From positions 186,001-250,000 of IMG/VR virus record IMGVR_UViG_3300043399_000272: DNA of 64,000 nt; one strand, given 5' to 3'. This document shows, piece after piece, positions 8,079-24,224 of this stretch. Numbering within the stretch: position 1 is the stretch's first letter; each line of letters begins with the position of its first letter. The position numbers and the translations under genes are program-made. The notes under the pieces are model-generated. The model made no database searches. It saw nothing but the letters and a program-made list of their open reading frames with translations, and had not been told where the DNA came from.

Positions 8079-8754
8079 AACGAAACACAGTTGCGAATTC
8101 TGCAACCGAACATTCGTCAGAGAAAAAACTCTGTTCACCCACATGTGTGAGACAAAGAATAGATGGTTGTCAAAAGATAAAATTGCAAATAGAATAGGAT
8201 TTCAAAGTTTCGTTCAATTTTATAAAAAACATTCTGCTGCTAAAAAGACAAAAACATATGATGAATTCATTCGTAGTCCATACTACACAGCTTTTGTAAA
8301 GTTTGGAAATTATTGTAGTGATATCAATGCTATCAACATTTCTCGTTTTGTTGATTGGTTATTAGCAGAACAAGTGTCAATTGATAATTGGAATAGTGAT
8401 AAAGTATATACTAGGTATTTGATCGAATATCTTAGAAAAGAAGATCCAATGGATGCTATACATCGTAGTGTAGAAACGTCAATAGAATTAGTAAAATCTG
8501 AAGGTATTCTTCCTAAAGACTTGTTGAGATTCGGTAATACAAACAAGATTTGTTATGCAATAACTACTGGTAAGATTAGCCCTTGGATGTTGTATCAAAG
8601 TAAAAGTGGCCCTAAGTTTTTAGACACGTTACACCCTGACCAAGTTAAATTCATTATAGATTATATTGATCCAGAGCAATGGGCACTAAAATTTCACAGA
8701 GAGCCGGAAAATGTCAGAGCAGTCAAAGAAATCCTTGATGTTGGGGGGTATTGA
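8056..8754 (+). CDS. hypothetical protein with N-terminal Zn finger
   Basis: CEFC-x12-HMC. Confidence 0.65.
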   Translation: MKKTEEIETKHSCEFCNRTFVREKTLFTHMCETKNRWLSKDKIANRIGFQSFVQFYKKHSAAKKTKTYDEFIRSPYYTAFVKFGNYCSDINAINISRFVDWLLAEQVSIDNWNSDKVYTRYLIEYLRKEDPMDAIHRSVETSIELVKSEGILPKDLLRFGNTNKICYAITTGKISPWMLYQSKSGPKFLDTLHPDQVKFIIDYIDPEQWALKFHREPENVRAVKEILDVGGY

Positions 8755-8965
8755 TATTAATCATGATTATAGAGTAAGAATACCCTTTACAGTAGGGTTC
8801 ATGAGTGACGGCGAAATAAATATGTGGAATGAAACATGTGCTAGAGCAATCGAGATGTTCGGATTGCCGGGTGACAAATACACATGTAGATTTACTAAAG
8901 AAGCGATTGAGTTTTGGTTCTTAGAAGAAAAAGATGCTATGATTTTTGAGTTGACTTGTGGATAA
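8711..8965 (+). CDS. array member (LRW-motif family)
   Basis: EMFGLPGDKY...FWFLEEKDAMIFELTCG. Confidence 0.7.
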   Translation: MSEQSKKSLMLGGIDINHDYRVRIPFTVGFMSDGEINMWNETCARAIEMFGLPGDKYTCRFTKEAIEFWFLEEKDAMIFELTCG

Positions 8966-9218
8966 GTGTTTAGAGTTTATATTGCCTAGCGGAGCAGCAG
9001 GTATGGCAGCCGGCATGACTCGTCAAGCTATAGGTAAAAAAATCAGAAAATTACAAGAAGATAAAAAAATAGGTCAGTATAAAACTAAAACGACAGGATA
9101 TAGATTTAAGGTATGGTTTGAGAATGAAATTGACTACACTACTTTTTTCCTTGTTTGGGAAGCCATTAACTCTTGGCATAAACCTAAAATCATTGAAGAA
9201 GATTACGATCCGAATTAA
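8958..9218 (+). CDS. array member (LRW-motif family, extended C-terminus)
   Basis: VWFENEIDYTTFFLVW. Confidence 0.65.
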   Translation: MDKCLEFILPSGAAGMAAGMTRQAIGKKIRKLQEDKKIGQYKTKTTGYRFKVWFENEIDYTTFFLVWEAINSWHKPKIIEEDYDPN

Positions 9219-9621
9219 AGCTCTTATAAGAATATTAAAAGCAAATCGCAAACTCAAAAAGAGTGGTTACAATAATTGGGCACATTATAAACATAACCGT
9301 GACCCCGATGTCGAAAGGTATGCTAATTGCATAGATGACTTCTACAAGGGTTATCCATATATCTATGCTTGCCCAAACCCAAACCACTATGCATATCAAC
9401 ACATAGCCGATTATGGACCAGGTGGTGACATATATGGGTTTAATGAGATAGAATTTTGGTGTCACGAAAAAATAAGGTGGAACTTTCGTTGTGACATGCA
9501 TAGAGTTTATGAGAATCAATGGGGAAAAATTGAGTTCAATGATATCGGAGGTTATGATAGAATATACTTTGCTTTTAAACGTGAACAAGATTTTACACAC
9601 TTTTTATTGCGATGGGCCTAA
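9118..9621 (+). CDS. array member (LRW-motif family); true start may be TTG at 9193
   Basis: IEFWCHE...YFAFKREQDFTHFLLRWA. Confidence 0.7.
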   Translation: MRMKLTTLLFSLFGKPLTLGINLKSLKKITIRIKALIRILKANRKLKKSGYNNWAHYKHNRDPDVERYANCIDDFYKGYPYIYACPNPNHYAYQHIADYGPGGDIYGFNEIEFWCHEKIRWNFRCDMHRVYENQWGKIEFNDIGGYDRIYFAFKREQDFTHFLLRWA

Positions 9622-9854
9622 AAAGAATATACATAATGTATCATACACCTAGATCGATGGAAGTTCTTTCATGGTTTTATGATACATTCGGTGAACCTCA
9701 GGAATGGGGAGGTATAATGTCAGAGCCTGTTCAATTGAAAAGTGGATATCAGTGGGCCAATGGTCAACATTCTACTAATTATCATGATGAAGCTAGTCCA
9801 TGTATTTGGTGTACAGAACAAGCGTTTATGATGTATTCTCTAAGGTGGTTATAA
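9612..9854 (+). CDS. array member (LRW-motif family)
   Basis: WFYDTFGEP...EQAFMMYSLRWL. Confidence 0.7.
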   Translation: MGLKRIYIMYHTPRSMEVLSWFYDTFGEPQEWGGIMSEPVQLKSGYQWANGQHSTNYHDEASPCIWCTEQAFMMYSLRWL

Positions 9855-10108
9855 TGGAACAAGGTAGCTTTACATATAAAACAACTAATTACTATGGTAG
9901 TCAACGAAAGATTCACATCGTATCTTGGAAAGGTAAGGGTGAAGTTGACGGGGATGAAATCCGAAAGTGGTGTATTGAAAACTTCGGAAATCCAGGTTAT
10001 CAGGAAGAACATTCTCAAGCTCGATGGCTAGATGATATTAAAGATTCGGGTGAAATCTATCTGTGTAAAGATGAAGATTTGACCTTTTTCTTACTCAAGT
10101 GGACATGA
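9854..10108 (+). CDS. array member (LRW-motif family)
   Basis: KWCIENFGNPG...IYLCKDEDLTFFLLKWT; TAATG overlap with previous stop. Confidence 0.75.
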   Translation: MEQGSFTYKTTNYYGSQRKIHIVSWKGKGEVDGDEIRKWCIENFGNPGYQEEHSQARWLDDIKDSGEIYLCKDEDLTFFLLKWT

Positions 10109-10314
10109 TGTACGATGATTTGACCCATAGGGTATTTCTAAAATGTCCAACTACAGACACAGATACAGTTGACAGGTGGTGTTACGAACATTTTGGTGAA
10201 CAGGGTGACAAATGGGATGCTTGGTTCGCAGATGATAGTCTCTGGAATTATGACCAAATTTATGCTTTCGTTAACCACGAAGATGCAGTACTTTTTACTC
10301 TAACTTGGGTATGA
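10105..10314 (+). CDS. array member (LRW-motif family)
   Basis: RWCYEHFGEQGDKW...YAFVNHEDAVLFTLTWV. Confidence 0.75.
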   Translation: MMYDDLTHRVFLKCPTTDTDTVDRWCYEHFGEQGDKWDAWFADDSLWNYDQIYAFVNHEDAVLFTLTWV

Positions 10315-10544
10315 GAAGATTACATTTTGATGGCTCTACTTGGCATGATACCAAACCCGGTTGGCATGAAATTGAATTGAATTTGAACGGTCAACCAAAA
10401 CGCTATCGTGAAATACTAGAATGGCTGTATAATACTATAGACAAGCCGGAAAGGCATTGTAGGTGGTTCCAAACGTCTGTTGGAATCAAAATTAAATTTA
10501 GGTACGAACGAGATTTTATTATCGCAACATTGAGGTGGACATGA
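10311..10544 (+). CDS. array member (LRW-motif family)
   Basis: EWLYNTI...IKFRYERDFIIATLRWT. Confidence 0.75.
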   Translation: MRRLHFDGSTWHDTKPGWHEIELNLNGQPKRYREILEWLYNTIDKPERHCRWFQTSVGIKIKFRYERDFIIATLRWT

Positions 10545-10894
10545 GAGTAGGTGTTTGGTATCGTACAGAATTACAACAACCCCCTAAGTCAGGTTACTAC
10601 CTTAGCTACAGAGGATGGGGTATCGCTGGCAAGGCAGATGACGACAGCGATTGGGGTTATGTCTATTACGATAAGAAAATAAATGAGTGGCGTGATTATC
10701 AAAATGTTAGCAGTAGCTATGCTATTGTCTATTACTGGACTGACGCTACGCCTGATGATTGGGTAAATCAAGACCCACCCGGTGTCACATTACATAAAGT
10801 AAAAGAAGAACACAATGTAGCACTGGAAGATGCGTGGAAGAAAGTTCAGGAGGCAATCGACCAGTACAACATGATTAAAGAGTTGGTGCGATGA
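10541..10894 (+). CDS. unrelated small protein inside the array (DUF551-like W..PP.SGYYL pattern)
   Basis: Coupled ATGA start; lacks the LRW motif. Confidence 0.6.
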   Translation: MRVGVWYRTELQQPPKSGYYLSYRGWGIAGKADDDSDWGYVYYDKKINEWRDYQNVSSSYAIVYYWTDATPDDWVNQDPPGVTLHKVKEEHNVALEDAWKKVQEAIDQYNMIKELVR

Positions 10895-11265
10895 CAATAC
10901 AATTACACGACTATCAATTGTGCGTTTTAGAACACTTAAAGGGATGGAAGCCGGGCGAAATGATGCTTATCTCTACTCCTAGACAAACTGGTAAAACTTA
11001 TCTCAATCAATTATTCGGTAAAATGAGTAACAGACAAATTTTTATGATGGGACCAGAACCTAAGTATAAATTCAGTCGTGCCAACTGGTATCAAGCAGAA
11101 TTTGACTGGCGAAAGTATGATGAAGTTGAAGAATGGTGCGAACAACAGTTTGGGCCGCACCCACAGAGACCAGATGCGTGGAGTCGCTGGTGGCATAAGT
11201 TTGAGAATAGCATTCTGTTCCGTGACGAAAAAGACTATGTATTGTTCATGTTGAGGTGGTCGTGA
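10891..11265 (+). CDS. array member with terminase-like P-loop fragment at N-terminus
   Basis: LHDYQ...PRQTGKT then EWCEQQFG...ILFRDEKDYVLFMLRWS. Confidence 0.75.
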   Translation: MTIQLHDYQLCVLEHLKGWKPGEMMLISTPRQTGKTYLNQLFGKMSNRQIFMMGPEPKYKFSRANWYQAEFDWRKYDEVEEWCEQQFGPHPQRPDAWSRWWHKFENSILFRDEKDYVLFMLRWS

Positions 11266-11507
11266 TGTTTATTCACACATACCAACAACAGGAGGATTGG
11301 AGAGATCCCGTACCCTGGTTTGTTGCTGCATTTACGACACCTAAGGAAAATCGTAAAGAGATTACCAAATGGTGTTACAAAACTTTTGGTGCCCCTAGTA
11401 TGAATCATCTTACTAAACAGATTCGTTGGAAAGATAGTATTCAATACGGTGAAATATATTTCAGTAATCAAAAAGACCTGGAGTGGTTTGTACTGAGGTG
11501 GTCATGA
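11265..11507 (+). CDS. array member (LRW-motif family)
   Basis: KWCYKTFG...IYFSNQKDLEWFVLRWS. Confidence 0.75.
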   Translation: MFIHTYQQQEDWRDPVPWFVAAFTTPKENRKEITKWCYKTFGAPSMNHLTKQIRWKDSIQYGEIYFSNQKDLEWFVLRWS

Positions 11508-11710
11508 CTATGCACAAAGTTGTTTATGCTCAAACTACAGATGGCACACTGTCTGCGTATCAGCGTAGCTATAAAGACCACCTAGTAGACGAATGGCTTA
11601 AAGAATATTGTAAAGGCCCTTACTATCATAACCCGGGCTGGACTACAGAAAAGTTTATTGAGTTTGAACGCAATGAAGATGCGTTTTGGTTTGCGTTAAG
11701 GTGGTGTTGA
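11504..11710 (+). CDS. array member (LRW-motif family)
   Basis: EWLKEYC...IEFERNEDAFWFALRWC. Confidence 0.75.
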   Translation: MTMHKVVYAQTTDGTLSAYQRSYKDHLVDEWLKEYCKGPYYHNPGWTTEKFIEFERNEDAFWFALRWC

Positions 11711-11952
11711 TGAATAACATTTCAGTTCATAATCTTATCGACAATCATATTATCAACTATCTTAGAGAGATTGATAAGCCCAGTAGAACATATTGGCCCT
11801 ATCTAATTCAGCTAAAATCTTGGGCTGACGTAAGCCCTGCTGAAAGATTCTGCTATACCCACTTCAAGAGTCGAAACTGGAGAAATATCAGCGCCGATTT
11901 TTATTTCAAACATAAAGAAGATTATGAATGGTTTATGTTAAGGTGGTCTTGA
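11710..11952 (+). CDS. array member (LRW-motif family)
   Basis: RFCYTHF...FYFKHKEDYEWFMLRWS. Confidence 0.75.
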   Translation: MNNISVHNLIDNHIINYLREIDKPSRTYWPYLIQLKSWADVSPAERFCYTHFKSRNWRNISADFYFKHKEDYEWFMLRWS

Positions 11953-12131
11953 TGGAAACAAATATTGTATATAGAGCTATGGCAGCAGGCAACTGGGATG
12001 AAAAAGTCGAATGGTGCAGAGAAAACTTGTATCCTGGAGGACACTATGAACCAAAATGGTATATGCGTTATCCTTGGATAGAATTTGATGATGAAAAAGA
12101 ATATATCTGGTTCAAGTTGAGGTGGGAATGA
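11952..12131 (+). CDS. array member (LRW-motif family)
   Basis: EWCRENL...IEFDDEKEYIWFKLRWE. Confidence 0.75.
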   Translation: METNIVYRAMAAGNWDEKVEWCRENLYPGGHYEPKWYMRYPWIEFDDEKEYIWFKLRWE

Positions 12132-12328
12132 GCCTAATTGACGATATCGATGATTTGATGTGGCCAGTATTTGTCAAGTTTGATAAAGCATTGGTTCCTG
12201 ACGAATGGTACGAACTAGATTGCTGGTGTAATCAGCAGTTTGGTAAAGATGGTTGGTGGCTTGAGAAAGGTGTCATGCGTCTTAGAAAAGAAGAACATGC
12301 TACAATATTCTTACTAAGATGGGGTTAA
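12128..12328 (+). CDS. array member (LRW-motif family)
   Basis: CWCNQQFGKDGWW...RLRKEEHATIFLLRWG. Confidence 0.75.
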   Translation: MSLIDDIDDLMWPVFVKFDKALVPDEWYELDCWCNQQFGKDGWWLEKGVMRLRKEEHATIFLLRWG

Positions 12329-12528
12329 TAGTTACAAAGTACATTTATGAAAATTTTGATACCGACGCCGCGGTAGAGTGGGCCATAGAAAATTGTCCTA
12401 GTTTTGAAAAGTACATGATAATAGAACTAGACTGGGAAGAAAAAGAAGATTTGGGTTGTTGGTTTAAATTTGAGGTATATTTTGGTGACGAAAAAGATGC
12501 AATGTTTTATTCATTGAGGTGGGCGTAA
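12319..12528 (+). CDS. array member (LRW-motif family)
   Basis: EWAIENC...VYFGDEKDAMFYSLRWA. Confidence 0.7.
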   Translation: MGLIVTKYIYENFDTDAAVEWAIENCPSFEKYMIIELDWEEKEDLGCWFKFEVYFGDEKDAMFYSLRWA

Positions 12529-12747
12529 TTGATTGAAGTGACATTAGAAGATAAATTACCTAGTGAGTTTTTAGAAATTGTTAGAGAAATTAAAGACAAA
12601 GGGTATGTTCAGGGAACTGACTTTGACTTTGCTTACCATCCACCCAAATTTGATAACTTTTCAGGGGATGCAGTGTATAATAGATGCGTCATATTCAAAT
12701 TTTATAAAGAAGAAATTGCAACATGGTTCAACCTAAAGTATCTTTGA
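12529..12747 (+). CDS. array member (LRW-motif family, LKY variant)
   Basis: FKFYKEEIATWFNLKYL; TTG start right after previous stop. Confidence 0.7.
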   Translation: MIEVTLEDKLPSEFLEIVREIKDKGYVQGTDFDFAYHPPKFDNFSGDAVYNRCVIFKFYKEEIATWFNLKYL

Positions 12748-12995
12748 TGGATGAAATAATCAAAGAAAAATTAGAAGAAATGGAAAAAAGTATAGACAAC
12801 GATGTGATGAGGTCTTGTCTAGTCGAAGGTGGATGGACAGAAATTAAATTTCATTATCACAGTGGTAAACACGCAGTTGATGTGTTAGAATGGTGCGGTG
12901 AAACGTTTAAAGAAAATCAATGGTCGAGACTGAATGGTTACTTTGTATTTCGCAAGAAAAAAGATGCTGAATGGTTTATGTTAAGGTGGCTATGA
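12747..12995 (+). CDS. array member with acidic N-terminal helix
   Basis: EEMEKSIDNDVMRSCL...EWCGETF...FVFRKKKDAEWFMLRWL. Confidence 0.75.
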   Translation: MDEIIKEKLEEMEKSIDNDVMRSCLVEGGWTEIKFHYHSGKHAVDVLEWCGETFKENQWSRLNGYFVFRKKKDAEWFMLRWL

Positions 12996-13333
12996 AAATC
13001 ATATGGGGAAGAAGCATAGGATGGAATATTTCCTATAATAATTACAGAAGCATACTGAAATACGCCGGCGATAATAATTTCGATATCACCCATAAAAATA
13101 TTAAAATGGAATATACTATAATAGAAAACGGTGCAGACTGCTATCCCTGGATGGAATACTTTGCGATATTACCTAGAAAAACAGTGACAGGTAAACGCAT
13201 ATGGTGGCAGAAAGCATATAAGCGTAAAGTATGGGTAGTGTGGGGCATAGGCTTTCACATGGAACCACATGTACAATATGCAACAGCCTTTGATTTGTTA
13301 ATGTATGACAACAACTATAACACTAAAAGGTAA
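12992..13333 (+). CDS. small protein, paralog of 32538-32762
   Basis: FAILPRKTVTGKRIWWQKAYKR...YATAFDLL. Confidence 0.65.
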   Translation: MKIIWGRSIGWNISYNNYRSILKYAGDNNFDITHKNIKMEYTIIENGADCYPWMEYFAILPRKTVTGKRIWWQKAYKRKVWVVWGIGFHMEPHVQYATAFDLLMYDNNYNTKR

Positions 13334-13526
13334 TTTAACTGGTGAACAAGAACAATGGCTCGCAAAGAATATCGGGCCTAGGATGCATTACATTCACAAT
13401 AGTATAGGTGGTCAAGGTTGGATAGCAAGACACGAATGGAAACCTGGAATGGTTTCTAAGTATTGGAATCTTTCTATTGAAGATGACCGTCTCGCTACAT
13501 TTTTTGTACTGATGTTCCCGCAATGA
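13305..13526 (+). CDS. array member (divergent)
   Basis: QWLAKNIG...GW...SIEDDRLATFFVLMF. Confidence 0.65.
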   Translation: MTTTITLKGNLTGEQEQWLAKNIGPRMHYIHNSIGGQGWIARHEWKPGMVSKYWNLSIEDDRLATFFVLMFPQ

Positions 13527-13867
13527 TAGAAAATCATCCTTTTAAAATTACAGAGTACGACAGGTTTGTAACTGTGACTTGGCCTGCTTTTCATGACATA
13601 CGAGACAAAATGACTAAAGTAAAATTAGTTGAGGCAGCATTTCAGCAATCTAAAGCAGTTGAGGTCGGGTTTGTATTAGAACTCAATAACAAAGAATATG
13701 ATATCATGTGGATCAATTCTTTTCTTAGTTTAACTCAAAATGATTATGTGCATTATGTACAAGACATGTATGTGATTAGAGGTGTTGCTTATAGAGATAA
13801 GCAAGACGCAGAAAAGTTATATAATTGGTTAGAAGGAAAGTATATATGGCAGCTATTAAAGGACTAG
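13523..13867 (+). CDS. hypothetical protein (possible divergent array member)
   Basis: VAYRDKQDAEKL. Confidence 0.6.
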   Translation: MIENHPFKITEYDRFVTVTWPAFHDIRDKMTKVKLVEAAFQQSKAVEVGFVLELNNKEYDIMWINSFLSLTQNDYVHYVQDMYVIRGVAYRDKQDAEKLYNWLEGKYIWQLLKD

Positions 13868-14100
13868 GAAGTTTTCAACCAATGATTGAGTATGTTGATG
13901 TGGTTCGTAATAACACGGATTACACCTCAAAGAAAACGTATATCCCTAAGCCCAATGATTCAGATGAACACATTAGATGGTGCCGCAGAAATTTAGGAGC
14001 TAGGGGTGATGGTTGGGACTTTGCAGGTTCTGGTAAAACGTTGACTATTTTTATTTGGTCACACAAATTGCAATTTATGTATGAAATGTGGCAACAATAG
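13825..14100 (+). CDS. array member (divergent)
   Basis: RWCRRNLGARGDGWDF...FMYEMW. Confidence 0.65.
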   Translation: MVRRKVYMAAIKGLGSFQPMIEYVDVVRNNTDYTSKKTYIPKPNDSDEHIRWCRRNLGARGDGWDFAGSGKTLTIFIWSHKLQFMYEMWQQ

Positions 14101-14924
14101 TGAAGAATAAAATAGGTATTGATATCGGCAAAACCAAAACTGAATGCTGTGTCATTTCACTTAACAACGAAGTGTTGTTTCGTGAAAGATTACCTACAGG
14201 TACCGTCTTTAATGAAATAAAAGAATTGTATCAAAAGGCTATCAAATACACAGATACAACGAATCACACCATCGGTGTGTGTATGCCGGGAAAATTAAGC
14301 AACGTTAGTGGGTTAATGATTAATTCTAGTATTGAATTTTTGAATAATACTGACTTTGTAAAAAATCTACAACTTGTTTTAAACCATGATTTTAAAACAG
14401 CAAATGATTCACAATGTTTTGCATTAGCAGAAGCATTACTAGGGGCAGGGAAAAATTATAATATTGTTTATGGCTTAATATTGGGCACTGGCGTGGGCGG
14501 GGGCATCGTAATAAACGGTAGAAGTACACAAAGCGAGTTTGGTCACACTAGTCTAGATAGTTCAAACAAAATACTATGTAGATGTAAGAGAATTGGTTGC
14601 GTTGAAACATGGCTCAGTGGCTCAGGTGTCGATGTATGGGCAAAAGAATTGTTAGGGATCGATATGTCTACTGTAGACTATATGAAAGATCCCAAAGTAA
14701 AGCAGATATACTTTGAAAAGTTTGGATTAGCTCTATCTAATTTAATTCAAACAGTTAATCCAGAATGTATTGTAATCGGTGGTGGAATCAGTAATAATAG
14801 TGAAGTATATTCCGTAGGTGTAGAGCGCATCAAACAAAAGTTGTTTGATGATGAATTGTCTATACCTGTAGTCAAAGCAGAACTAGGAGATAGTGCAGGC
14901 GTTATAGGTGCTGCACTTTTATAA
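14088..14924 (+). CDS. ROK-family sugar kinase
   Basis: GIDIGKT, NDSQCFALAE, LGTGVGGG, EFGH, CxC..GCxE Zn site, IGGG, AGVIGAA. Confidence 0.88.
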   Translation: MATIVKNKIGIDIGKTKTECCVISLNNEVLFRERLPTGTVFNEIKELYQKAIKYTDTTNHTIGVCMPGKLSNVSGLMINSSIEFLNNTDFVKNLQLVLNHDFKTANDSQCFALAEALLGAGKNYNIVYGLILGTGVGGGIVINGRSTQSEFGHTSLDSSNKILCRCKRIGCVETWLSGSGVDVWAKELLGIDMSTVDYMKDPKVKQIYFEKFGLALSNLIQTVNPECIVIGGGISNNSEVYSVGVERIKQKLFDDELSIPVVKAELGDSAGVIGAALL

Positions 14925-14926
14925 TT

Positions 14927-15496
14927 ATGGCAAATGATATAATGATTGACCTTGAAACACTTGACACGACACCGTATTGTGTAATTCTCACAATCGGTGC
15001 AGTCAGGTTCGATCCTAGAGGTCAAGGAGTGGTTGAACGATTAGAACTACGTCCTACGATTGAGGATCAAACAGAAATTCATAATAGAATAATTGATGAT
15101 GACACATTACGGTGGTGGTCTACACAGAGCCCTGATGCACTTGAAGAAGCATTGGGAGACAGGGGACGTACATCATTTAGAGAGTGCATGGAGGCCCTTT
15201 ATAAGTTTTGTTGGAACCGTCGTGCTGTTTGGGCTAATGGTTCTGCATTTGATATCGTAGCATGTGAAACAGGTATGCGTCAGACATTGACTGATTATCC
15301 TAATCCTATTCCGTGGCCATTCTGGACAGTTAGAGATACACGAACACTGTATGAAGTAGCAGGTGTTAGTTTGAAGGATAAGAAATACGGTAGCAAAACA
15401 ACGCACAAAGCAGTCGAAGATGCAGAACACCAAGCGATTGTTGTGCAAGACGCATACATGAAATTGATGAAAGCAGGATTGGCAACACCGCGATGA
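14927..15496 (+). CDS. DEDDh 3'-5' exonuclease (Rv2179c/exodeoxyribonuclease VIII-like)
   Basis: MIDLETL, WANGSAFD, RDTRT, HKAVEDA. Confidence 0.85.
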   Translation: MANDIMIDLETLDTTPYCVILTIGAVRFDPRGQGVVERLELRPTIEDQTEIHNRIIDDDTLRWWSTQSPDALEEALGDRGRTSFRECMEALYKFCWNRRAVWANGSAFDIVACETGMRQTLTDYPNPIPWPFWTVRDTRTLYEVAGVSLKDKKYGSKTTHKAVEDAEHQAIVVQDAYMKLMKAGLATPR

Positions 15497-15954
15497 AAAC
15501 ATACGGTGAATTATTACCTGGCTTAAAGATCATTGAACATACAAAGTACAATGATAATAGAGGTAATTTTTGTGAAACATGGAAGATAACAAATGATGGG
15601 ATGCGAGGATCGTTCCGTCAATTGAACACTGCAACATCTAAACAAAATGTCATTCGTGGTATGCACAGACAAGACCAATCTAAGTTGATTATGCCTGTTT
15701 ATGGTAGAATATTTGACGTTGCACTAGAACCTGAAACTGGTAAGTGGTTTGCGATTGAATTAGACAACACCTCAGGTTTATTAGTACCACCAGAATACGC
15801 ACACGGTTACATGACATTAACTGAAAACACGATAGTGCAGTATATTGTAGACATGCCCTATAATAAAGACGTTGAAGAAAATTTCAAATGGGATCAATAT
15901 AACATCGCTTGGCCAATCGTTGTTACACCCATACTATCAGAGAAAGACAAATGA
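15493..15954 (+). CDS. rmlC: dTDP-4-dehydrorhamnose 3,5-epimerase
   Basis: DNRGNFCE, RGMH, AHGY, ILSEKD cupin motifs. Confidence 0.85.
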   Translation: MKTYGELLPGLKIIEHTKYNDNRGNFCETWKITNDGMRGSFRQLNTATSKQNVIRGMHRQDQSKLIMPVYGRIFDVALEPETGKWFAIELDNTSGLLVPPEYAHGYMTLTENTIVQYIVDMPYNKDVEENFKWDQYNIAWPIVVTPILSEKDK

Positions 15955-16442
15955 AAGTAGGATTTAATTGTTCAAGTTTTGATTTGTTTCATGCTGGGCA
16001 TGTTACCATGCTTAAAATGGAAAAAAAGTTATGTGACTATCTAATTGTTGCACTTCAAGTTGATCCTACTATTGATAGGCCTGGCATCAAAAATAAACCT
16101 ACACAATCTGTCTATGAACGATACGTACAATTGCAGTCATGTAAATATGTAGACGAGATACTAGTATATTCTACCGAATATGACCTACTTCAATTATTGA
16201 TGACCCAAAAGATCGACATTCGTTTTTTGAGTGAAGAATATCTTAACAGAGATTTCACGGGCAAGCAATATTGCATTCAAAATGGAATCGAGTTATACTA
16301 TCACAAACGTGAACATGATTATAGTTCAACCGAGTTGCGTAACAGAATATATATGTTAGAAAAACTCAAGCGTGAAACAACTCAACCAGAAACAGAGATA
16401 CCGCAACACAGTCCTGAATTGGTTAAAAAGAATGAAATTTAA
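15951..16442 (+). CDS. cytidylyltransferase (TagD/glycerol-3-phosphate CTase-like)
   Basis: FDLFHAGH (HxGH), ER...SCKYVDE, SSTELR. Confidence 0.85.
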   Translation: MKVGFNCSSFDLFHAGHVTMLKMEKKLCDYLIVALQVDPTIDRPGIKNKPTQSVYERYVQLQSCKYVDEILVYSTEYDLLQLLMTQKIDIRFLSEEYLNRDFTGKQYCIQNGIELYYHKREHDYSSTELRNRIYMLEKLKRETTQPETEIPQHSPELVKKNEI

Positions 16443-17013
16443 TAGTGACATTGACATTGATTTTAGTAACCGTGATGATATACTAAAGCATATCAGGCAC
16501 ATACCTGCAGCCATGCGTAATGTTAATCCAATTCGTAAACATGCGACTGGAATCTATGTGACAGACATTCCATATGATGCAGTGAATGACATGGCTAACA
16601 TTGATTATGTAGAAGCAGAGGATCGTGGATATATTAAGTTAGATATGCTTAATGTGCATGTATATAATCAAGTCAAAGACGAAATGCACTTAATCGAGTT
16701 GATGCGTGAGCCTGACTGGAATAAGTTAAAAGATCGAGAATTTGTTGAAAAACTGATACACTTGTCAAATCACTACAATAGTCTTTGCAAAATGCCAGAA
16801 CCAGTTGACAGTATTCCTAGACTAGCTATGTTTTTGGCTATTATTCGTCCAGGAAAAAAGCATTTAATTGGTCTGCCCTGGAAAGAAGTAGCTAAAACTG
16901 TATGGGAAAAAGGAAGTGACGGGTATAGCTTCAAAAAAGCACATGCAATTGGGTATTCTTGGTTAGTAGCAGTTCATATGAACTTGCTTACAGAATCTTC
17001 TTCACAAGGGTAA
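16432..17013 (+). CDS. miniature DNA polymerase III alpha (DnaE), C-terminal catalytic half
   Basis: SDIDIDF, KHATGIYV, GYIKLDML, LAIIRPG and GYSFKKAHA occur in DnaE order within 193 aa. Confidence 0.85.
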   Translation: MKFNSDIDIDFSNRDDILKHIRHIPAAMRNVNPIRKHATGIYVTDIPYDAVNDMANIDYVEAEDRGYIKLDMLNVHVYNQVKDEMHLIELMREPDWNKLKDREFVEKLIHLSNHYNSLCKMPEPVDSIPRLAMFLAIIRPGKKHLIGLPWKEVAKTVWEKGSDGYSFKKAHAIGYSWLVAVHMNLLTESSSQG

Positions 17014-17377
17014 TTGATTTTCTTTTAGATTTCTTTTTACTGAGTTCAAGCATACTACATATAGGTCCGTGTAATACTGTCAAACTCTTATTGTTAAATG
17101 TTCTTAAGTAGGGCTTAAAGATAGCCCAGTCTTCTTTTAGAAACATATTAATGGGTACTAATCTGTTTGATTCCCACCACCAAACATCCCCTAATAACAA
17201 AAATTGCTCTCTTAACTCTTGTTGTGCTATAGATCCATAATCATATATAGTGGTGACTAAATCATCACGGTTTTGTACTATACCAACATAATCTTGGCCA
17301 GCATAGGAACAAACGGTGATGAATGGGTGATTTTCTGTTAGTTTTTTAAAGAAATCGTTATGAAGCATAAAAATCAA
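16988..17377 (-). CDS. hypothetical protein (late)
   Basis: 129 aa ORF; GATAAATA on minus strand at 17386-17393. Confidence 0.7.
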   Translation of the reverse strand: MIFMLHNDFFKKLTENHPFITVCSYAGQDYVGIVQNRDDLVTTIYDYGSIAQQELREQFLLLGDVWWWESNRLVPINMFLKEDWAIFKPYLRTFNNKSLTVLHGPICSMLELSKKKSKRKSITLVKKIL

Positions 17378-17417
17378 TTACCAAATATTTATCAAATCTC
17401 GTTACCCAATATATTTT

Positions 17418-17425
17418 TATAAATA
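17418..17425 (+). promoter_or_regulatory. T4-type late promoter TATAAATA (divergent pair with 17386-17393)
   Basis: Exact T4 gp55 consensus upstream of a structural-type gene. Confidence 0.7.
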
Positions 17426-17442
17426 TATAAAAGGAGCAAACT

Positions 17443-18213
17443 GTGTATTCAACAAGTGTTTATTTTTATATCCCAAGACAAACTGTTGTGGTTTACAGTG
17501 GCAATTCTACTAGGAGGTATGCGATTGTGTATGCTAAGAATCTAACATTGAACAAGGGCGTGGATAATAAAATCCAATTTCAGTTCTTAAACCAAGAACA
17601 AAAACCATTTGATATTACAGGTAAGAGTATTACCTTTAGACTATTAGATGAAAGTGGAAGTGAAATCTTATTGCAAAAAGGAGTATTACCTACACTAGCT
17701 TTAAAGGGAATATGTGAATTAACAACTACTGCAAGCGAAATTGAAGATATTAACCCACAGTATTGTTCATATAGTTTAGAAATCTCTGATAATGATTATG
17801 ATCTTCCGGTATTTGTTAGTTCAGAAGCCTCTGCAAGAGGGGCAGTTAGTGTTGTAGACAGTGTGTTTCCTAGTTTTGTTCCTGCAATAAATGTAGAAAT
17901 CCCCACACATTTGTTGCCTAATACTATCGCTAATACAAGCACTGTAAATTATTCAACTAGCATTATTAACACCAAAGATAATCCTATGCTAAGTATTCAG
18001 TGCTATCTTGACAGCTATAGTGGTACTGTCGAGATATATGGATCCACTATTTATAGCCCGGATTTGTCTGCAATAGGATATCAAATATCCAATAATGGTC
18101 CTTATACCACTGAATCTGGTTCTAAAGGCTATAGTATTTCAGGATATCACCCGTATGTGCAATTAAAATTTACCAGCACTGAGGGTAATGTCACCAAAGT
18201 ATTAGCCAGATAA
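17443..18213 (+). CDS. putative virion structural protein (Ig-like/beta-sandwich)
   Basis: Late promoter; S/T/Y-rich; C-terminal domain resembles 62368-62724. Confidence 0.55.
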   Translation: MYSTSVYFYIPRQTVVVYSGNSTRRYAIVYAKNLTLNKGVDNKIQFQFLNQEQKPFDITGKSITFRLLDESGSEILLQKGVLPTLALKGICELTTTASEIEDINPQYCSYSLEISDNDYDLPVFVSSEASARGAVSVVDSVFPSFVPAINVEIPTHLLPNTIANTSTVNYSTSIINTKDNPMLSIQCYLDSYSGTVEIYGSTIYSPDLSAIGYQISNNGPYTTESGSKGYSISGYHPYVQLKFTSTEGNVTKVLAR

Positions 18214-18215
18214 TA

Positions 18216-18244
18216 TTGATTTATTCTAGTAAGAAGTATACAAT
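18216..18244 (+). promoter_or_regulatory. sigma70-like promoter for primase-helicase
   Basis: TTGATT-17-TACAAT. Confidence 0.55.
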
Positions 18245-18250
18245 ATAAGA

Positions 18251-19222
18251 ATGTTCGACATTCTAGGTTTAATTCCGGGTAAAAAGAAGCATACAAACAG
18301 CGGGTGGACTAGCTTTAACGCAGTCTGCTGTAGCCATCGCGGCCATAATCCAGACAGAAGAATGCGAGGCGGGCTACGTATTGATGGAAATAATTGGGTG
18401 ATGCATTGCTTCAACTGCGGATATAGTTGTAGCTTTATGCTCGGTAGGAGTATAAATGCAAAAACCAGACAGTTCCTTATTTGGTGCGGAGTAGATAGTG
18501 AACAAGTACAAAAATGGAGTTTAGAAAGCCTTCAGAAAAAAGATTTGCTTCAACTATACCTAGAACAGAAAAAACGCTTTACGATTAAATTTAAATCTAA
18601 GAGGCTGCCGGACAATTCTGAACAAATTACTGAACAAGGTACTCATAAGTTCTATGTAGATTATTTGAAAAAGCGCAAAATAGACTATGAAAAATATGTT
18701 CTCTATTGCAACCCTTCCGGTGGTCAACGTAAAAAATATGGTATTATAATTCCCTACACATATAAAGGAAAAATAGTAGGACACACTACAAGGTTTCTGG
18801 ATAACAAAAGTCCTAAATATATCAATGAACAACAACAAGGCTATGTCTTTAATATTGACATGCAGAAACCAGAATGGAATGTATGCATTGTAACTGAAGG
18901 TATTTTTGATGCAATGGCAATCGATGGTGTTGCACTGATGCATGACGATATTAGTAATGAGCAAGCAATACTACTAAGTACACTAAACAGAAAAATTATT
19001 GTAGTGCCGGATTTTGACAAAACTGGTTTGAAAATTACAGATAGGGCGTTAGAACTTGGATATCATGTCAGCTTACCCAACTGGGGTCCTGATATTAAAG
19101 ACGTTAACGATGCAGTAGTAAAGTATGGTAAGCTCCCTACATTATTGGCAATACTTGAAAACGCAACGATGAGCAAGATAAAAATTGAAATGAGGAAGAA
19201 ACAGATTGCTAAAGGATTATAA
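18251..19222 (+). CDS. DNA primase (gp61-like)
   Basis: Zn ribbon CC...HCFNCG, KYIN, TOPRIM EGIFDA, PDFD, KDVND. Confidence 0.85.
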   Translation: MFDILGLIPGKKKHTNSGWTSFNAVCCSHRGHNPDRRMRGGLRIDGNNWVMHCFNCGYSCSFMLGRSINAKTRQFLIWCGVDSEQVQKWSLESLQKKDLLQLYLEQKKRFTIKFKSKRLPDNSEQITEQGTHKFYVDYLKKRKIDYEKYVLYCNPSGGQRKKYGIIIPYTYKGKIVGHTTRFLDNKSPKYINEQQQGYVFNIDMQKPEWNVCIVTEGIFDAMAIDGVALMHDDISNEQAILLSTLNRKIIVVPDFDKTGLKITDRALELGYHVSLPNWGPDIKDVNDAVVKYGKLPTLLAILENATMSKIKIEMRKKQIAKGL

Positions 19223-20633
19223 TATTGATGTACAGACCCTATTTCTGCGTATGTTAGTAACAAACGCAGAATTGTTTACAAGGGTTACAAACATCATGAA
19301 TCCACAAAACTTTGATAAGTCTCTCAGACCTGTGGCTGAGCTACTTAAGGAGCACAGTGAAAAATACAGTGTGTTACCTTCTCCTGAACAAATCAAAGCA
19401 ACGACTGGAGTTGAAATTGATGTAGTACCAGAGTTAAACGAAGGTCACTCTGAATGGTTTTTAGATGAATTTGAAAAATTTACTAAGCGCCAAGAACTTG
19501 AACGTGCTATCCTTCAAGCAGCCGATATGCTTGAAAAGGGTGATTACGGTCCTGTTGAAAAGATGATTAAGGACGCTGTACAAATCAGTTTACAAAAAGA
19601 CATGGGTACAGATTACTTTGCTGACCCCAAGACACGAATTAATAAGTATTTCAATGCAGGTGGGCAGGTTAGTACAGGATGGCCACAACTTGACAGACTA
19701 CTATATGGTGGTTTTAGTCGGGGTGAACTAAACATCTTTGCAGGTGGTTCTGGTTCAGGTAAGTCTTTGGTTATGATGAATATTGCATTGAACTGGTTGA
19801 ACGTAGGTCTAAGTGGTGTTTACGTTTCACTAGAACTTTCAGAAGAACTAACATCATTGCGTACTGATGCGATGTTGACCAGTATGAGTACCAAAGATAT
19901 TCGCAAAGATATTGATTCTGCTGAATTGAAGATTAAAATGATGAGTAAGAAGTCTGGTCAATATCGAGTTAAAGGTATGCCTGCACAATCTAACGTTAAC
20001 GATATTCGTGCTTATTTGAAAGAAGTACAAATTCAGACAGGAATCAAAATTGATTTTGTGATGATTGATTATTTGGATCTGGTTATGCCCGTGTCTGTTA
20101 AAGTAAATCCCAATGATCAGTTTATCAAAGACAAGTATGTTTCAGAAGAATTGCGTAACTTAGCAAAAGAGCTAGGCATTTTAATGGTAACTGCATCTCA
20201 GTTGAATCGTAGTGCTGTAGAGGAAATTGAGTTTGATCATAGTCACATTGCAGGTGGCATTTCAAAGATTAACACTGCGGATAACGTCTTTGGTATATAT
20301 CGTACTAGAAGTATGATGGAGCGAGGAAAGTATCAGATTCAATGTATGAAATCTCGTAGTAGTACAGGCGTAGGTCAAAAAATCGATTTAGACTATAATA
20401 TGGAAACTATGCGTATTACAGATGATGATCCTGAAGGATACGCAGACCAGCAAGCAAAGTATAAACAGCAACCTAGTGCAAATGACATAATGAGTAAATT
20501 GAAGCCGCAAAGCACTATAACAACAAACGATCAGGTTCAGTCTTTTGTCCAACCAGAAGCAAAACGAGTAGTAGGTGATGTTCAGGGTGCTAAATTAAAA
20601 GCACTATTGAATACGATTCAAAAAGATAAATAA
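19206..20633 (+). CDS. replicative DnaB-like helicase (gp41-like)
   Basis: STGW, GGSGSGKS, SLEL, IDYLD, TASQLNR, KSR. Confidence 0.9.
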   Translation: MLKDYNIDVQTLFLRMLVTNAELFTRVTNIMNPQNFDKSLRPVAELLKEHSEKYSVLPSPEQIKATTGVEIDVVPELNEGHSEWFLDEFEKFTKRQELERAILQAADMLEKGDYGPVEKMIKDAVQISLQKDMGTDYFADPKTRINKYFNAGGQVSTGWPQLDRLLYGGFSRGELNIFAGGSGSGKSLVMMNIALNWLNVGLSGVYVSLELSEELTSLRTDAMLTSMSTKDIRKDIDSAELKIKMMSKKSGQYRVKGMPAQSNVNDIRAYLKEVQIQTGIKIDFVMIDYLDLVMPVSVKVNPNDQFIKDKYVSEELRNLAKELGILMVTASQLNRSAVEEIEFDHSHIAGGISKINTADNVFGIYRTRSMMERGKYQIQCMKSRSSTGVGQKIDLDYNMETMRITDDDPEGYADQQAKYKQQPSANDIMSKLKPQSTITTNDQVQSFVQPEAKRVVGDVQGAKLKALLNTIQKDK

Positions 20634-20651
20634 TAGTAGGACATATTTATT

Positions 20652-20891
20652 ATGCAAAGAAAAACTCGTAGCTTACTAGAGGAATTAGAGTCCCTAGGAC
20701 AAAATCGTGATACTAAGCATATCATCGAAAACCGAGCCCAACATATCATCACTAGTGCTATAAATTTGCTAGAAATGATCAATAAATATTACGATCCTGA
20801 CAAGGCCCAGATCCTAGAGCGTAAACTTTTAAACGCAATCAAGACTAGAGATCAAGAAAAATTCAGCAAATCCATCAAAAAAGATAGTTAA
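20652..20891 (+). CDS. small late protein
   Basis: GATAAATA at 20625-20632; N-terminal SLLEE. Confidence 0.65.
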   Translation: MQRKTRSLLEELESLGQNRDTKHIIENRAQHIITSAINLLEMINKYYDPDKAQILERKLLNAIKTRDQEKFSKSIKKDS

Positions 20892-20978
20892 AAATCTATC
20901 TGCAAACCCAACTTTTTTTGCAAAAGGCATAAATAAAAGTAGAGCCTATATGGCTCAACTATTTAAAGGAAAATTAAA

Positions 20979-21368
20979 ATGGCACAACAAACTAAAGTTC
21001 ACGGTGATTTCAAAGGCGTAGCTAACTATGACGTTCGTGATTATACAGTAGGTTCTCTAAATGCAGTTACTTCTGCTCAAACAGTACAACCACAAGGTCC
21101 TAAGCTAGACTTTGGTACTATCACTTTCACAGGTGCAGCAAGCCCATCATTAGCTGACATCAAGACAGCTATTGACACAATCCAACAATTAGCAGTTGTT
21201 TATGTATATGAGTATACTGAAGTTGGTGACAATACTGACACTCTAGCAGTTGCAGTATACCCAACAGGTGCATGGGATTTCGCAAACGGTGGTTCTTTAG
21301 ACGCAGCTTTAACTTCTGCTCTAGGATATGCTGTTACTACAGCCGCTACAGCAACATTCACTAACTAA
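20979..21368 (+). CDS. probable abundant virion protein (monocistronic late gene)
   Basis: CATAAATA at 20928, SD aagga, own terminator, Ala/Thr-rich. Confidence 0.6.
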   Translation: MAQQTKVHGDFKGVANYDVRDYTVGSLNAVTSAQTVQPQGPKLDFGTITFTGAASPSLADIKTAIDTIQQLAVVYVYEYTEVGDNTDTLAVAVYPTGAWDFANGGSLDAALTSALGYAVTTAATATFTN

Positions 21369-21383
21369 TTTAAAACTTAGTCT

Positions 21384-21413
21384 AAAAACCCGAGAATATT
21401 CTCGGGTTTTTTT
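21384..21413 (+). terminator. rho-independent terminator
   Basis: aaaaacccgagaa-ta-ttctcgggttttttt. Confidence 0.85.
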
Positions 21414-21431
21414 ACCTCTATAAATATCATT

Positions 21432-21890
21432 ATGAGTTATAGAATAAGATGCTATACGTTATTTGATATCACGCAAACCGGAGTTTTGATTAGACGACCC
21501 CCGATAAATTTGTCAGACGACCAAAGAGTCGATTGGGAAAATCGCAGAAATTCACAGTCTAATTTTGACACGGTTGTTCAGGTGATAAATCTAAGAAGCC
21601 AACCTGAAGAAATGTCAATAACTACCTCGTCTTACATCAACTTCAAAGAATTTCAAAACTTTGGATTTATGTATGAAGATGAAGAAGATCAAATGTGTTG
21701 GCAATTTGATTTTTCGATTAGACATAAAAGTGTATTTGACGACGGAGTAAGTGAACTAGGAGCATTATTCGATGATTGCGAAGGTGTACCTATGATTAAA
21801 CACGGTATAAAGTGGGAGAAACTTGCATCATTTTTAGATACATCCCCTGAATTTCGAAATATTTATTTTGAGGTACTATCAAATGAGTGA
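21432..21890 (+). CDS. hypothetical late protein
   Basis: TATAAATA at 21419-21426. Confidence 0.7.
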   Translation: MSYRIRCYTLFDITQTGVLIRRPPINLSDDQRVDWENRRNSQSNFDTVVQVINLRSQPEEMSITTSSYINFKEFQNFGFMYEDEEDQMCWQFDFSIRHKSVFDDGVSELGALFDDCEGVPMIKHGIKWEKLASFLDTSPEFRNIYFEVLSNE

Positions 21891-22356: not shown

Positions 22357-22406
22357 AAATAATTTAGAAAAAGATAAATACATAATCAGTACTCTAGGAC
22401 AATACT

Positions 22407-23123: not shown

Positions 23124-23126
23124 AAT

Positions 23127-23456: not shown

Positions 23457-23465
23457 CCAAATAGA

Positions 23466-23494
23466 TTGTACTATGTAGAAATATATAGTACAAT
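23466..23494 (+). promoter_or_regulatory. sigma70-like promoter
   Basis: TTGTAC-17-TACAAT. Confidence 0.5.
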
Positions 23495-23500
23495 TTTTTT

Positions 23501-24187: not shown

Positions 24188-24224
24188 TTCGAGATAAATA
24201 GTATAATCAAATAAAGATTATACT

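What the first reader, a model, noticed from the sequence alone, without database searches (positions are those of the whole stretch)
9841..12995. The LRW codons double as the Shine-Dalgarno of the next cassette (dual-coded junction, possible recombination site)
Seen in sequence: in 9 of 11 members ending L-R-W, Arg is AGG (positions 9843, 10533, 11254, 11496, 11699, 11941, 12120, 12517, 12984). This gives (T/C)T(A/G)AGGTGG, 2-6 nt before the next start codon, which overlaps or abuts the stop. Elsewhere in the window Arg appears mostly as CGT/AGA. Established: (G/A)AGGTG pairs with the 16S anti-SD (3'-AUUCCUCCACUAG). Inference: each unit carries the RBS for whatever follows it, so units are plug-and-play. 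The shared 3' sequence could also serve as the homology or crossover point for inserting and shuffling cassettes, in an integron-like way but with no integrase visible.
Basis: partly seen in the sequence, partly recalled or inferred. Interest (0 to 1): 0.75.

Follow-up and report, generated by a model that had tools for sequence, protein, structure and literature searches.

The report
Trp-tail codons start next gene
In a freshwater jumbo phage, a run of small related genes all end in Leu-Arg-Trp, and the DNA spelling of that tail also supplies the ribosome-binding site (or the start codon itself) of the next gene; this is a neat family-wide case of a known trick, not a new kind of system.

Summary
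Eleven ORFs in window 9235-12995 end L-R-W-x-stop, and nine use AGG at exactly the stated positions. AGG is 6% of Arg codons genome-wide (P about 6e-10).

The signal is not ancestry or codon-pair bias. R-W dipeptides elsewhere use AGG in 2 of 46 cases. Internal R-W in the family uses it in 12 of 79.

In 162 unique junctions from this phage and about 25 related metagenomic contigs:
- AGG is used in 95 of 111 L-R-W-x-stop tails.
- AGG goes with a start codon 8-12 nt downstream (92 AGG, 6 other). Where no such start exists the counts are 3 AGG and 10 other (Fisher 4e-8).
- The Leu codon co-varies, giving GAGGTGG.
- Predicted anti-SD pairing is -12.4 kcal/mol. It falls to -6.4 or -3.9 with synonymous Arg codons.

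With NNA-TGG, the ATG formed inside the Arg/Lys-Trp codons is the next gene's start, and there is no SD.

Plug-and-play is supported: one cassette precedes at least 12 different downstream genes. The recombination-site idea stays unproven. Mosaic joints fall in the motif, but non-LRW junctions are also shuffled. No integrase or attC-like repeats were found.

Verdict: a new variant of intragenic-SD translational coupling.

The parts
8711..14100 (+). Array of about 20 tightly packed small genes (59-128 aa) with no intergenic spacers. It lies in a hyperplastic region between a helicase block and an exonuclease/DnaB block. Thirteen clear members of one paralogous family are present, plus distant members and two unrelated genes.
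   Evidence: ORF list. HMM built from the members finds 13 hits at E<1e-7 and weaker ones at 8690-8965, 8955-9218, 12529-12747, 13302-13526 and 13825-14100. No promoter or terminator enrichment. Synteny with L001 and L007.
9840..9856 (+). Type I junction: CTA AGG TGG TTA TAA with ATG at 9854 (TAATG overlap).
10530..10544 (+). Type I junction: TTG AGG TGG ACA TGA with ATG at 10541 (ATGA overlap). The next gene is an unrelated 117-aa ORF.
11251..11267 (+). Type I junction: TTG AGG TGG TCG TGA with ATG at 11265 (TGATG overlap).
   Evidence: Contigs of related strains diverge just behind 11266-11269.
11493..11507 (+). Type I junction: CTG AGG TGG TCA TGA with ATG at 11504 (ATGA).
   Evidence: This cassette's orthologs precede at least 12 different genes in relatives.
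11696..11712 (+). Type I junction: TTA AGG TGG TGT TGA with ATG at 11710 (TGATG).
11938..11954 (+). Type I junction: TTA AGG TGG TCT TGA with ATG at 11952 (TGATG).
12117..12131 (+). Type I junction: TTG AGG TGG GAA TGA with ATG at 12128 (ATGA).
12514..12531 (+). Type I junction: TTG AGG TGG GCG TAA followed directly by a TTG start at 12529.
12981..12995 (+). Type I junction: TTA AGG TGG CTA TGA with ATG at 12992 (ATGA). The next gene is an unrelated 113-aa ORF (MKIIWGRS...). In relatives the same gene pair uses the type II junction.
9607..9621 (+). Type II junction: TTG CGA TGG GCC TAA. The ATG at 9612, formed by the last base of the Arg codon plus TG of the Trp codon, opens the next ORF (MGLKRIY...). 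There is no abutting start and no SD.
   Evidence: The orthologous junction in L010 is AGA TGG GCT TAA (MGLRIIY...).
12314..12328 (+). Type II junction: CTA AGA TGG GGT TAA. The ATG at 12319 is the only plausible start of the next member. The next in-frame Met is residue 33, which would remove the conserved VEW motif.
10094..10108 (+). Lys variant of the junction: CTC AAG TGG ACA TGA with ATG at 10105 (ATGA).
   Evidence: AAG rather than AAA goes with an abutting start in relatives (10 of 11 against 6 of 13, P=0.03).
10300..10314 (+). Thr variant of the junction: CTA ACT TGG GTA TGA with ATG at 10311 and no SD-like core. A co-occurring strain lacks this cassette exactly (joint 10104 to 10311).

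Best explanation
The region is a polycistronic array of small paralogous genes in the hyperplastic region of a freshwater T4-like jumbo phage. Each protein ends in a C-terminal helix closing with F-x-L-(R/K)-W plus one residue.

The protein needs a basic residue and a Trp there. The choice of codons is set by the next gene's translation start, and the junction exists in two interchangeable states.

State I is (T/C)TG AGG TGG NNN stop. The Leu-Arg-Trp codons spell GAGGTGG or TAAGGTGG, a strong Shine-Dalgarno sequence. The next start codon overlaps or abuts the stop (ATGA, TGATG/TAATG), so it sits 8-12 nt after the A of AGG. Ribosomes terminating on, or binding at, the junction then initiate on whatever ORF follows.

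State II is NNA TGG NNN TAA. The third base of the Arg/Lys codon plus TG of the Trp codon forms the ATG of the next gene, with a 10-nt overlap and no SD. Initiation there presumably depends on termination-reinitiation coupling.

Shown here: the sequence pattern, its codon-level enrichment, its positional dependence, its covariation with start-codon position across relatives, and the predicted pairing energy. Inferred: that ribosomes actually use these signals, and how much initiation is coupled rather than independent.
For: - AGG is used in 9 of 11 members here against a 6.2% background.
- AGG is used in 95 of 111 L-R-W-x-stop tails in 162 unique junctions from this phage and relatives.
- Other Arg codons in the same genes are AGG in about 10% of cases. 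Arg before Trp elsewhere is AGG in 2 of 46 and 12 of 79 cases.
- AGG against presence of an abutting start: [[92,6],[3,10]], Fisher 4e-8, or 2e-6 without this genome.
- The Leu codon before AGG ends in G in 85 of 95 cases, against 18 of 46 before other codons (P 8e-10). TTG+CTG are 25% genome-wide.
- With three residues after Trp, Arg is never AGG (0 of 4). The K/T-W-G-G-E tails (3 of the 7 three-residue tails) instead encode GGAG in the Gly-Gly-Glu codons.
- Mean predicted duplex with the anti-SD tail is -12.4 kcal/mol. It is -6.4 after AGG to AGA, -3.9 after AGG to CGT and -2.9 for random 18-mers.
- Other ATGA/TRATG pairs in this genome average only -4.6.
- State II: 18 of 20 non-AGG junctions without an abutting start have NNA-TGG, against 14 of 26 with one (P 0.01).
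- The same gene pair toggles between states in relatives, for example AGG..CTATGA (MKIIWG) against CGATGGCTATAA or AAATGGCTATAA (MAIKIIWG).
- 113 of 120 database homologs end L-(R/K)-W plus exactly one residue.
- There are no intergenic promoters or terminators.
Against: - There is no expression, ribosome-profiling or reporter data.
- The host and its 16S tail are unknown. The E. coli-type anti-SD was assumed, although gene starts in this genome are enriched for TAAGGAG.
- The junctions are phylogenetically related, so the Fisher tests overstate independence.
- Six AGA junctions keep an abutting start without AGG, so the SD is not obligatory.
- AGG to AGA is a single transition, which partly explains the excess of NGA among non-AGG codons.
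- The SD is predicted to be somewhat more base-paired than neighbouring sequence (unpaired probability 0.33 against 0.45).
Confidence: 0.78

Rival explanations
1. The conserved junction (F-x-L-R-W codons plus the stop/start overlap, 9-21 nt shared between cassettes) is mainly or additionally a crossover site. Short-homology recombination between junctions inserts, deletes and reorders cassettes in register. It would be a translational-level analogue of the PeSL elements of T4-type phages.
For: - Cassette content and order differ between relatives, including reordering.
- Between blocks that are 88-99% identical, homology repeatedly ends right after ...TTGAGGTGG and begins at TTTGTNTTGAGGTGG.
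- Contigs of co-occurring strains diverge at 11266-11269 and 12523-12529, and one lacks the cassette 10105-10311 exactly.
- Paralogous junctions inside this genome share up to 21 identical bases, within 49-55-nt repeats of 62-84% identity.
- The terminal Ser codon switches between TCA and AGT according to the downstream partner.
Against: - Genes overlap at the junction, so any viable joint must fall there. BLAST also extends into the shared motif from both sides whatever the history.
- Adjacency is broken about as often at non-LRW junctions of the same region (22 of 34 against 45 of 56).
- Joints at ordinary SD/start sites are equally sharp elsewhere in relatives.
- Only assembled contigs were available, so no rare junction-to-junction recombinants could be looked for.
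- No site-specific recombinase was found.
Confidence: 0.3
2. AGG is a frozen accident. The cassettes arose by tandem duplication and the junction has been kept uniform by ancestry or gene conversion, with no role in translation.
For: The members are paralogs, and the junction is the most conserved nucleotide stretch between them.
Against: - Paralogs are only 23-38% identical in protein sequence, so synonymous sites are saturated.
- The neighbouring Leu codon varies among four codons in this genome.
- Other Arg codons in the same genes follow background usage.
- AGG tracks the presence and distance of the downstream start across relatives.
Confidence: 0.07
3. AGG matters as a rare, slowly decoded codon just before the stop. 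It would pause ribosomes to tune termination or reinitiation, rather than pairing with 16S rRNA.
For: AGG is the second-rarest Arg codon (6%). The phage carries its own tRNA-Arg(CCU).
Against: - A phage-encoded cognate tRNA argues against a strong pause.
- The rarer CGG is not used here.
- The co-varying G-ending Leu codon, the fixed 8-12 nt distance to the start and the GGAG-encoding G-G-E tails all point to an SD, not to rarity.
Confidence: 0.08

Closest known systems
Overlapping gene pairs with an intragenic Shine-Dalgarno motif and translational coupling by termination-reinitiation (Huber et al. 2019, PMC6728339; reviewed in PMC12548453)
   Same: ATGA and TGATG stop/start overlaps. An SD located in the last codons of the upstream gene. 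The strong-SD class (<= -8.4 kcal/mol). Coupling also possible without an SD (state II).
   Different: Here the SD coincides with a conserved protein motif (L-R-W) of a multi-copy paralogous family. The same dual-coded junction is therefore repeated at each cassette and kept while the downstream partner changes. Other overlapping pairs of this same genome mostly lack a strong SD.
Selection on synonymous codons at gene 3' ends by the downstream gene's SD. This covers adaptation of short spacers and stop codons to the SD (PMC2784483), non-translational pressures on local codon usage (PMC8410138), and Eyre-Walker 1996, the last cited from memory.
   Same: Codon choice near the stop is shaped by the neighbour's ribosome-binding site.
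   Different: Those are weak genome-wide statistical effects. Here it is near-deterministic at one residue of one family (86% AGG against 6% background) and extends to the preceding Leu codon.
PeSL mobile regulatory cassettes of T4-type phages (Arbiol et al. 2010, PMC2839356; Comeau et al. 2014, PMC4122927)
   Same: Small ORFs of unknown function in hyperplastic regions of T4-like genomes. A short conserved motif at every ORF boundary. Indels and replacements between relatives are bounded by the motif. Each unit brings an expression signal.
   Different: PeSLs are intergenic early-promoter plus stem-loop elements that act in transcription. Here there is no intergenic DNA, and no promoter or terminator signal. 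The motif lies inside the upstream ORF and acts, by inference, in translation.
Integron gene-cassette arrays
   Same: A one-orientation string of promoterless small cassettes whose content varies between relatives.
   Different: No IntI-type integrase, no attC inverted repeats, cassettes are paralogs of one family, and the setting is a lytic-type T4-like phage genome.

Membership tests
Translationally coupled overlapping gene pairs with intragenic SD | Stop and start codons overlap (ATGA, TGATG/TAATG) or abut | tested here: met
   9 of 9 AGG junctions in the window. 92 of 95 AGG junctions overall.
Translationally coupled overlapping gene pairs with intragenic SD | SD-like sequence in the 3' end of the upstream ORF at a functional distance, with strong predicted pairing to the anti-SD | tested here: met
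   Mean -12.4 kcal/mol. Start at +8 to +12 from the A of AGG. Pairing is lost with synonymous codons. The host 16S is unknown, so a canonical tail was assumed.
Translationally coupled overlapping gene pairs with intragenic SD | Downstream translation depends on upstream translation and/or on the SD | not testable with these tools
   Needs reporter constructs or ribosome profiling.
Integron cassette array | Tyrosine-recombinase integrase (IntI) next to the array | tested here: not met
   PF00589 has no match in the 260-kb record. PF00239 also has none. The record is estimated 74% complete.
Integron cassette array | attC imperfect inverted repeat at the 3' end of each cassette | tested here: not met
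   Only 8 short inverted repeats in 8500-14200, and none recurs at junctions.
Integron cassette array | Promoterless cassettes in one orientation with variable content | tested here: met
PeSL modular-shuffling elements of T4-type phages | Intergenic early promoter plus stem-loop between ORFs | tested here: not met
   No intergenic space. Promoter-like sites: 36 found against 34 expected. Terminator-like sites: 6 against 4, none on the + strand.
PeSL modular-shuffling elements of T4-type phages | Indel and replacement boundaries between related phages coincide with the motif | tested here: inconclusive
   Joints fall in the motif. However, non-motif junctions are shuffled at a similar rate, and selection for intact overlapping genes predicts the same.
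PeSL modular-shuffling elements of T4-type phages | Located in a hyperplastic region of a T4-like genome | tested here: met
   T4-type tail sheath. Conserved flanks with RecA-like (L001), helicase and DnaB genes and a variable middle.
Any curated protein family (Pfam, PHROGs) | Significant profile match | tested here: not met
   No Pfam hit above cut-off and no PHROG at E<=0.01 for 10 members. The AF2 model (pLDDT 86) has no PDB match at E<0.5, and in BFVD it matches only uncharacterised phage proteins down to about E 0.15 (ranks 1-19).

The most novel reading that the evidence does not exclude
The F-x-L-R-W / TTGAGGTGG-stop-start junction is a self-contained mobile 'translational linker'. It would be at once the C-terminal helix end of one protein, the ribosome-binding site of the next gene, and the short-homology crossover point that lets these phages shuffle, gain and lose small ORFs in register. 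That would make it a translation-level counterpart of PeSLs, and it would explain why the family has expanded to 10-20 copies per genome.
Probability: 0.25. Interest if true: 0.7.

Novelty: new variant of a known kind. Interest (0 to 1): 0.5.

Why it matters
This is an unusually clean natural example of one short sequence under two simultaneous constraints, a protein motif and a ribosome-binding site. It has a built-in evolutionary control: the same gene pairs toggle between 'SD in the tail' and 'start codon in the tail'.

It has a practical use. Annotators of jumbo-phage metagenomes can use it to place start codons in such arrays, including the 10-nt overlaps that gene callers miss.

It gives a simple testable model for how hyperplastic regions keep newly arrived ORFs expressed without carrying promoters.

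If the junction also proves to be the crossover site, it would extend the PeSL idea of motif-mediated modular shuffling to a translational signal. The function of the protein family itself, found here only in phage and metagenomic sequences, remains unknown.

Tried and rejected
- Megablast and single-protein tblastn against GenBank phages found nothing. Relatives exist only in metagenomes.
- The search for related loci with the paralog alignment failed because no stretch was conserved enough.
- Pfam, PHROGs, PDB and Atlas gave no function for the family. A weak eIF1/SUI1-like resemblance (TM 0.47, E 0.5-1) is not significant and was not pursued.
- Codon-pair bias for AGG-TGG was rejected.
- A general habit of this genome to embed strong SDs in overlaps was rejected.
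- Integron membership was rejected.
- No Rfam family lies in the region.
- mRNA structure sequestering the SD gave only a small effect, 0.33 against 0.45 unpaired, which is not decisive.
- Read laying had only assembled contigs, so rare recombinants could not be sought. It showed strain-level whole-cassette differences only.
- Comparing the adjacency-break rate at LRW and non-LRW junctions did not separate the models.
- A frameshift or fusion reading of the junction was considered and dropped, because there is no slippery site. A Chi-like reading of GGTGG was also considered and dropped, because there is no full Chi match and the host is unknown. Neither was tested with a tool.
- My simple gene caller missed several array genes and over-weights the SD when choosing starts. 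The statistics that matter were therefore anchored on stop codons or on explicit junction strings.


Full report
**Context.** The window is bases 186001-250000 of a single 260,148-bp virus record with 37.8% G+C. The record comes from a freshwater metagenome and is estimated 74% complete. Its tail sheath is T4-type, 44% identical to that of Pseudomonas jumbo phage PA5oct.

The finding lies in a block of about 20 small, same-strand, abutting or overlapping ORFs at window 8711-14100. Upstream is a helicase block and downstream an exonuclease/DnaB block. In relatives the flanks are conserved and the middle is variable, which is the layout of a T4-like hyperplastic region. Promoter-like and terminator-like sites are not enriched there. 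No Rfam family matches.

**The observation.** A six-frame regex scan of the whole genome finds 11 ORFs ending L-R-W-x-stop. All are in this block. There is also one L-K-W member and one L-T-W member.

Each AGG junction reads (C/T)T(A/G) AGG TGG NNN stop. The next start overlaps or abuts the stop:
- TAATG or TGATG at four junctions;
- ATGA at four junctions;
- TAA followed by TTG at one junction.

AGG is 6.2% of Arg codons in called genes outside the array and 9.8% of the other Arg codons inside the array genes. The binomial probabilities are 6e-10 and 4e-8.

**Is it more than ancestry or context?**
- The paralogs are only 23-38% identical in protein sequence.
- The Leu codon next to AGG varies (TTG, CTG, TTA, CTA).
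- Arg before Trp elsewhere in the genome is AGG in 2 of 46 cases. Internal Arg-Trp pairs in family members across all loci are AGG in 12 of 79, with CGT commonest.

So neither codon-pair bias nor simple inheritance explains it.

**Relatives.** A profile of the paralogs finds 171 homologs, all unnamed or labelled only 'hypothetical protein' and from metagenomes, several on contigs of 230-360 kb. Of the 120 listed, 113 end L-(R/K)-W plus exactly one residue.

I fetched 37 loci and extracted 162 non-redundant family junctions. Among L-R-W-x-stop tails the Arg codon is AGG 95 times, AGA 11, CGA 4 and CGG 1.

The key test is whether AGG goes with a start codon that overlaps or abuts the stop.
- With such a start: 92 AGG, 6 other.
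- Without one: 3 AGG, 10 other.
- Fisher 4e-8, or 2e-6 when this genome is left out.

Further support:
- The only CGG sits at the end of an array, before a 90-nt gap.
- When three residues follow Trp, Arg is never AGG (0 of 4). The K/T-W-G-G-E tails (3 of the 7 three-residue tails) instead spell GGAG just before the ATGA.
- The Leu codon before AGG ends in G in 85 of 95 cases, giving GAGGTGG. Before other codons it does so in 18 of 46 (P 8e-10). TTG+CTG are 25% of Leu codons genome-wide.

**Pairing energy.** The predicted duplex between the 18 nt upstream of the start and a canonical 16S tail averages as follows.

| Sequence set | Mean duplex energy (kcal/mol) |
|---|---|
| AGG junctions as found | -12.4 |
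| Same, AGG changed to AGA | -6.4 |
| Same, AGG changed to CGT | -3.9 |
| Random 18-mers of the genome | -2.9 |

Gene starts elsewhere in this genome are enriched for TAAGGAG-type motifs, so the host uses SD-led initiation. However, the other 47 ATGA/TRATG overlaps of this genome average only -4.6. The strong junction SD is therefore a property of this family, not of the genome.

**A second junction state.** Of the 23 junctions with no abutting start, 18 have NNA-TGG. The third base of the Arg, Lys, Thr or Val codon plus TG of Trp makes an ATG in the +2 frame that opens the next ORF. Both non-AGG members of the window are of this kind:
- 9612, opening MGLKRIY...;
- 12319, opening MGLIVTK..., where no other start is available.

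These ATGs have no SD (mean -2.4 kcal/mol). NNA is enriched specifically where no other start exists: 18 of 20, against 14 of 26 where one does (P 0.01).

The same gene pair toggles between states in relatives. Upstream of the 113-aa gene this genome and L019 have AGG TGG NNA TGA (MKIIWG..., MKLVWN...). L001, L010 and L012 have CGA or AAA, then TGG CTA TAA (MAIKIIWG...). There the former ATG has become an Ile codon and TGA has become TAA by one G-to-A change. Sixteen of the 18 state-II junctions still encode Arg or Lys, and Trp is invariant. The protein therefore needs a basic residue plus Trp whatever the junction state, and the codon spelling serves the neighbour.

**Plug-and-play.** Orthologs of the 11265-11507 cassette (tail EWFVLRWS) are followed by at least 12 unrelated downstream genes in 19 relatives. 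Seventeen of the 19 keep an AGG TGG TC(A/G) stop junction. The junction also feeds unrelated, non-family genes.

**Recombination.** Cassette content and even order differ between relatives. Between blocks that are 88-99% identical, homology repeatedly stops right after ...TTGAGGTGG and starts at TTTGTNTTGAGGTGG. Contigs of co-occurring strains diverge at the same junctions, and one lacks the cassette 10105-10311 exactly. Junctions inside this genome share up to 21 identical bases.

This is what short-homology crossover would give. It is also what selection for intact overlapping genes, plus BLAST extension into a shared motif, would give. Adjacency is broken at 45 of 56 informative LRW junctions and at 22 of 34 non-LRW junctions of the same region. 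Joints at ordinary SD/start sites elsewhere are equally sharp. No integrase or resolvase and no attC-like repeats were found. I therefore treat the crossover role as possible but unproven, and the integron analogy as superficial.

**The proteins.** The AF2 model of the 80-aa member has pLDDT 86 and a beta-beta-alpha-beta-beta-alpha fold. The L-R-W motif closes the C-terminal helix. No Pfam, PHROG or PDB relative was found. BFVD and the Atlas return only uncharacterised phage proteins as credible matches. Function is unknown.

**Comparison with known systems.** Overlaps of the ATGA/TGATG type with an SD in the upstream gene, and coupling with or without an SD, are well documented (PMC6728339; PMC12548453 and PMC2784483). 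Motif-bounded shuffling of small ORFs in T4-type hyperplastic regions is known for PeSLs, which are intergenic promoter-terminator elements (PMC2839356 and PMC4122927).

What is particular here is that a conserved protein motif of an expanded family is itself the ribosome-binding site, or the start codon, of the next gene. This holds family-wide and across genomes, with two interconvertible states.

**Verdict.** The SD dual-coding reading is well supported and the recombination reading is open. It is a new variant of a known kind, of moderate interest.

Noticed in passing
genome G000 8642-24649 (outside the window) and 160460-160533: ARAGORN tRNAs, 46 of them in one minus-strand cluster. They include tRNA-Arg(CCU), which reads AGG. 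There is also a call with a four-base anticodon and a lone CUA-anticodon tRNA (labelled Pyl, i.e. amber-suppressor-like). TAG is the rarest stop (10 of 300 called genes).
   Followed up: partly
L029:630-650, L030:1476-1496, L032:2276-2296: Family members whose tail is K/T-W-G-G-E-stop encode a GGAG Shine-Dalgarno in the Gly-Gly-Glu codons just before an ATGA start. It is a third way of writing the next gene's RBS into the C-terminus.
   Followed up: partly
window 10104-10311 (runs X1, X2): In the source sample a related strain, at about three times the depth of this phage, has a contig that joins 10104 directly to 10311. It lacks exactly the 10105-10314 cassette, with a 4-nt ATGA ambiguity at the joint.
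   Followed up: partly
L002:1-1800 and 18284-18901 (356-kb relative): A larger relative carries IF3, ribosomal protein S21, HSP20, ClpS and a Clp protease near its copy of the array. These are translation and proteostasis genes in a jumbo phage.
   Followed up: no
window 14088-14924: The 278-aa ORF just after the array looks like a ROK-type sugar kinase/regulator from its N-terminal glycine motif. This is from memory only and was not tested. It is absent from the syntenic relatives L001 and L007 at that place.
   Followed up: no
window 11265-11504 (model m0e4c35b8da2d): The best, non-significant, PDB fold neighbours of the family model are eIF1/SUI1-type and mitoribosomal small alpha/beta proteins (TM about 0.45-0.47, E 0.5-1).
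   Followed up: no
whole genome, 47 ATGA/TRATG overlaps outside the array: Most overlapping gene pairs of this phage have little or no SD in the upstream gene (mean -4.6 kcal/mol, only 7 at or below -8.4). SD-less coupling seems to be the norm outside the LRW family.
   Followed up: partly
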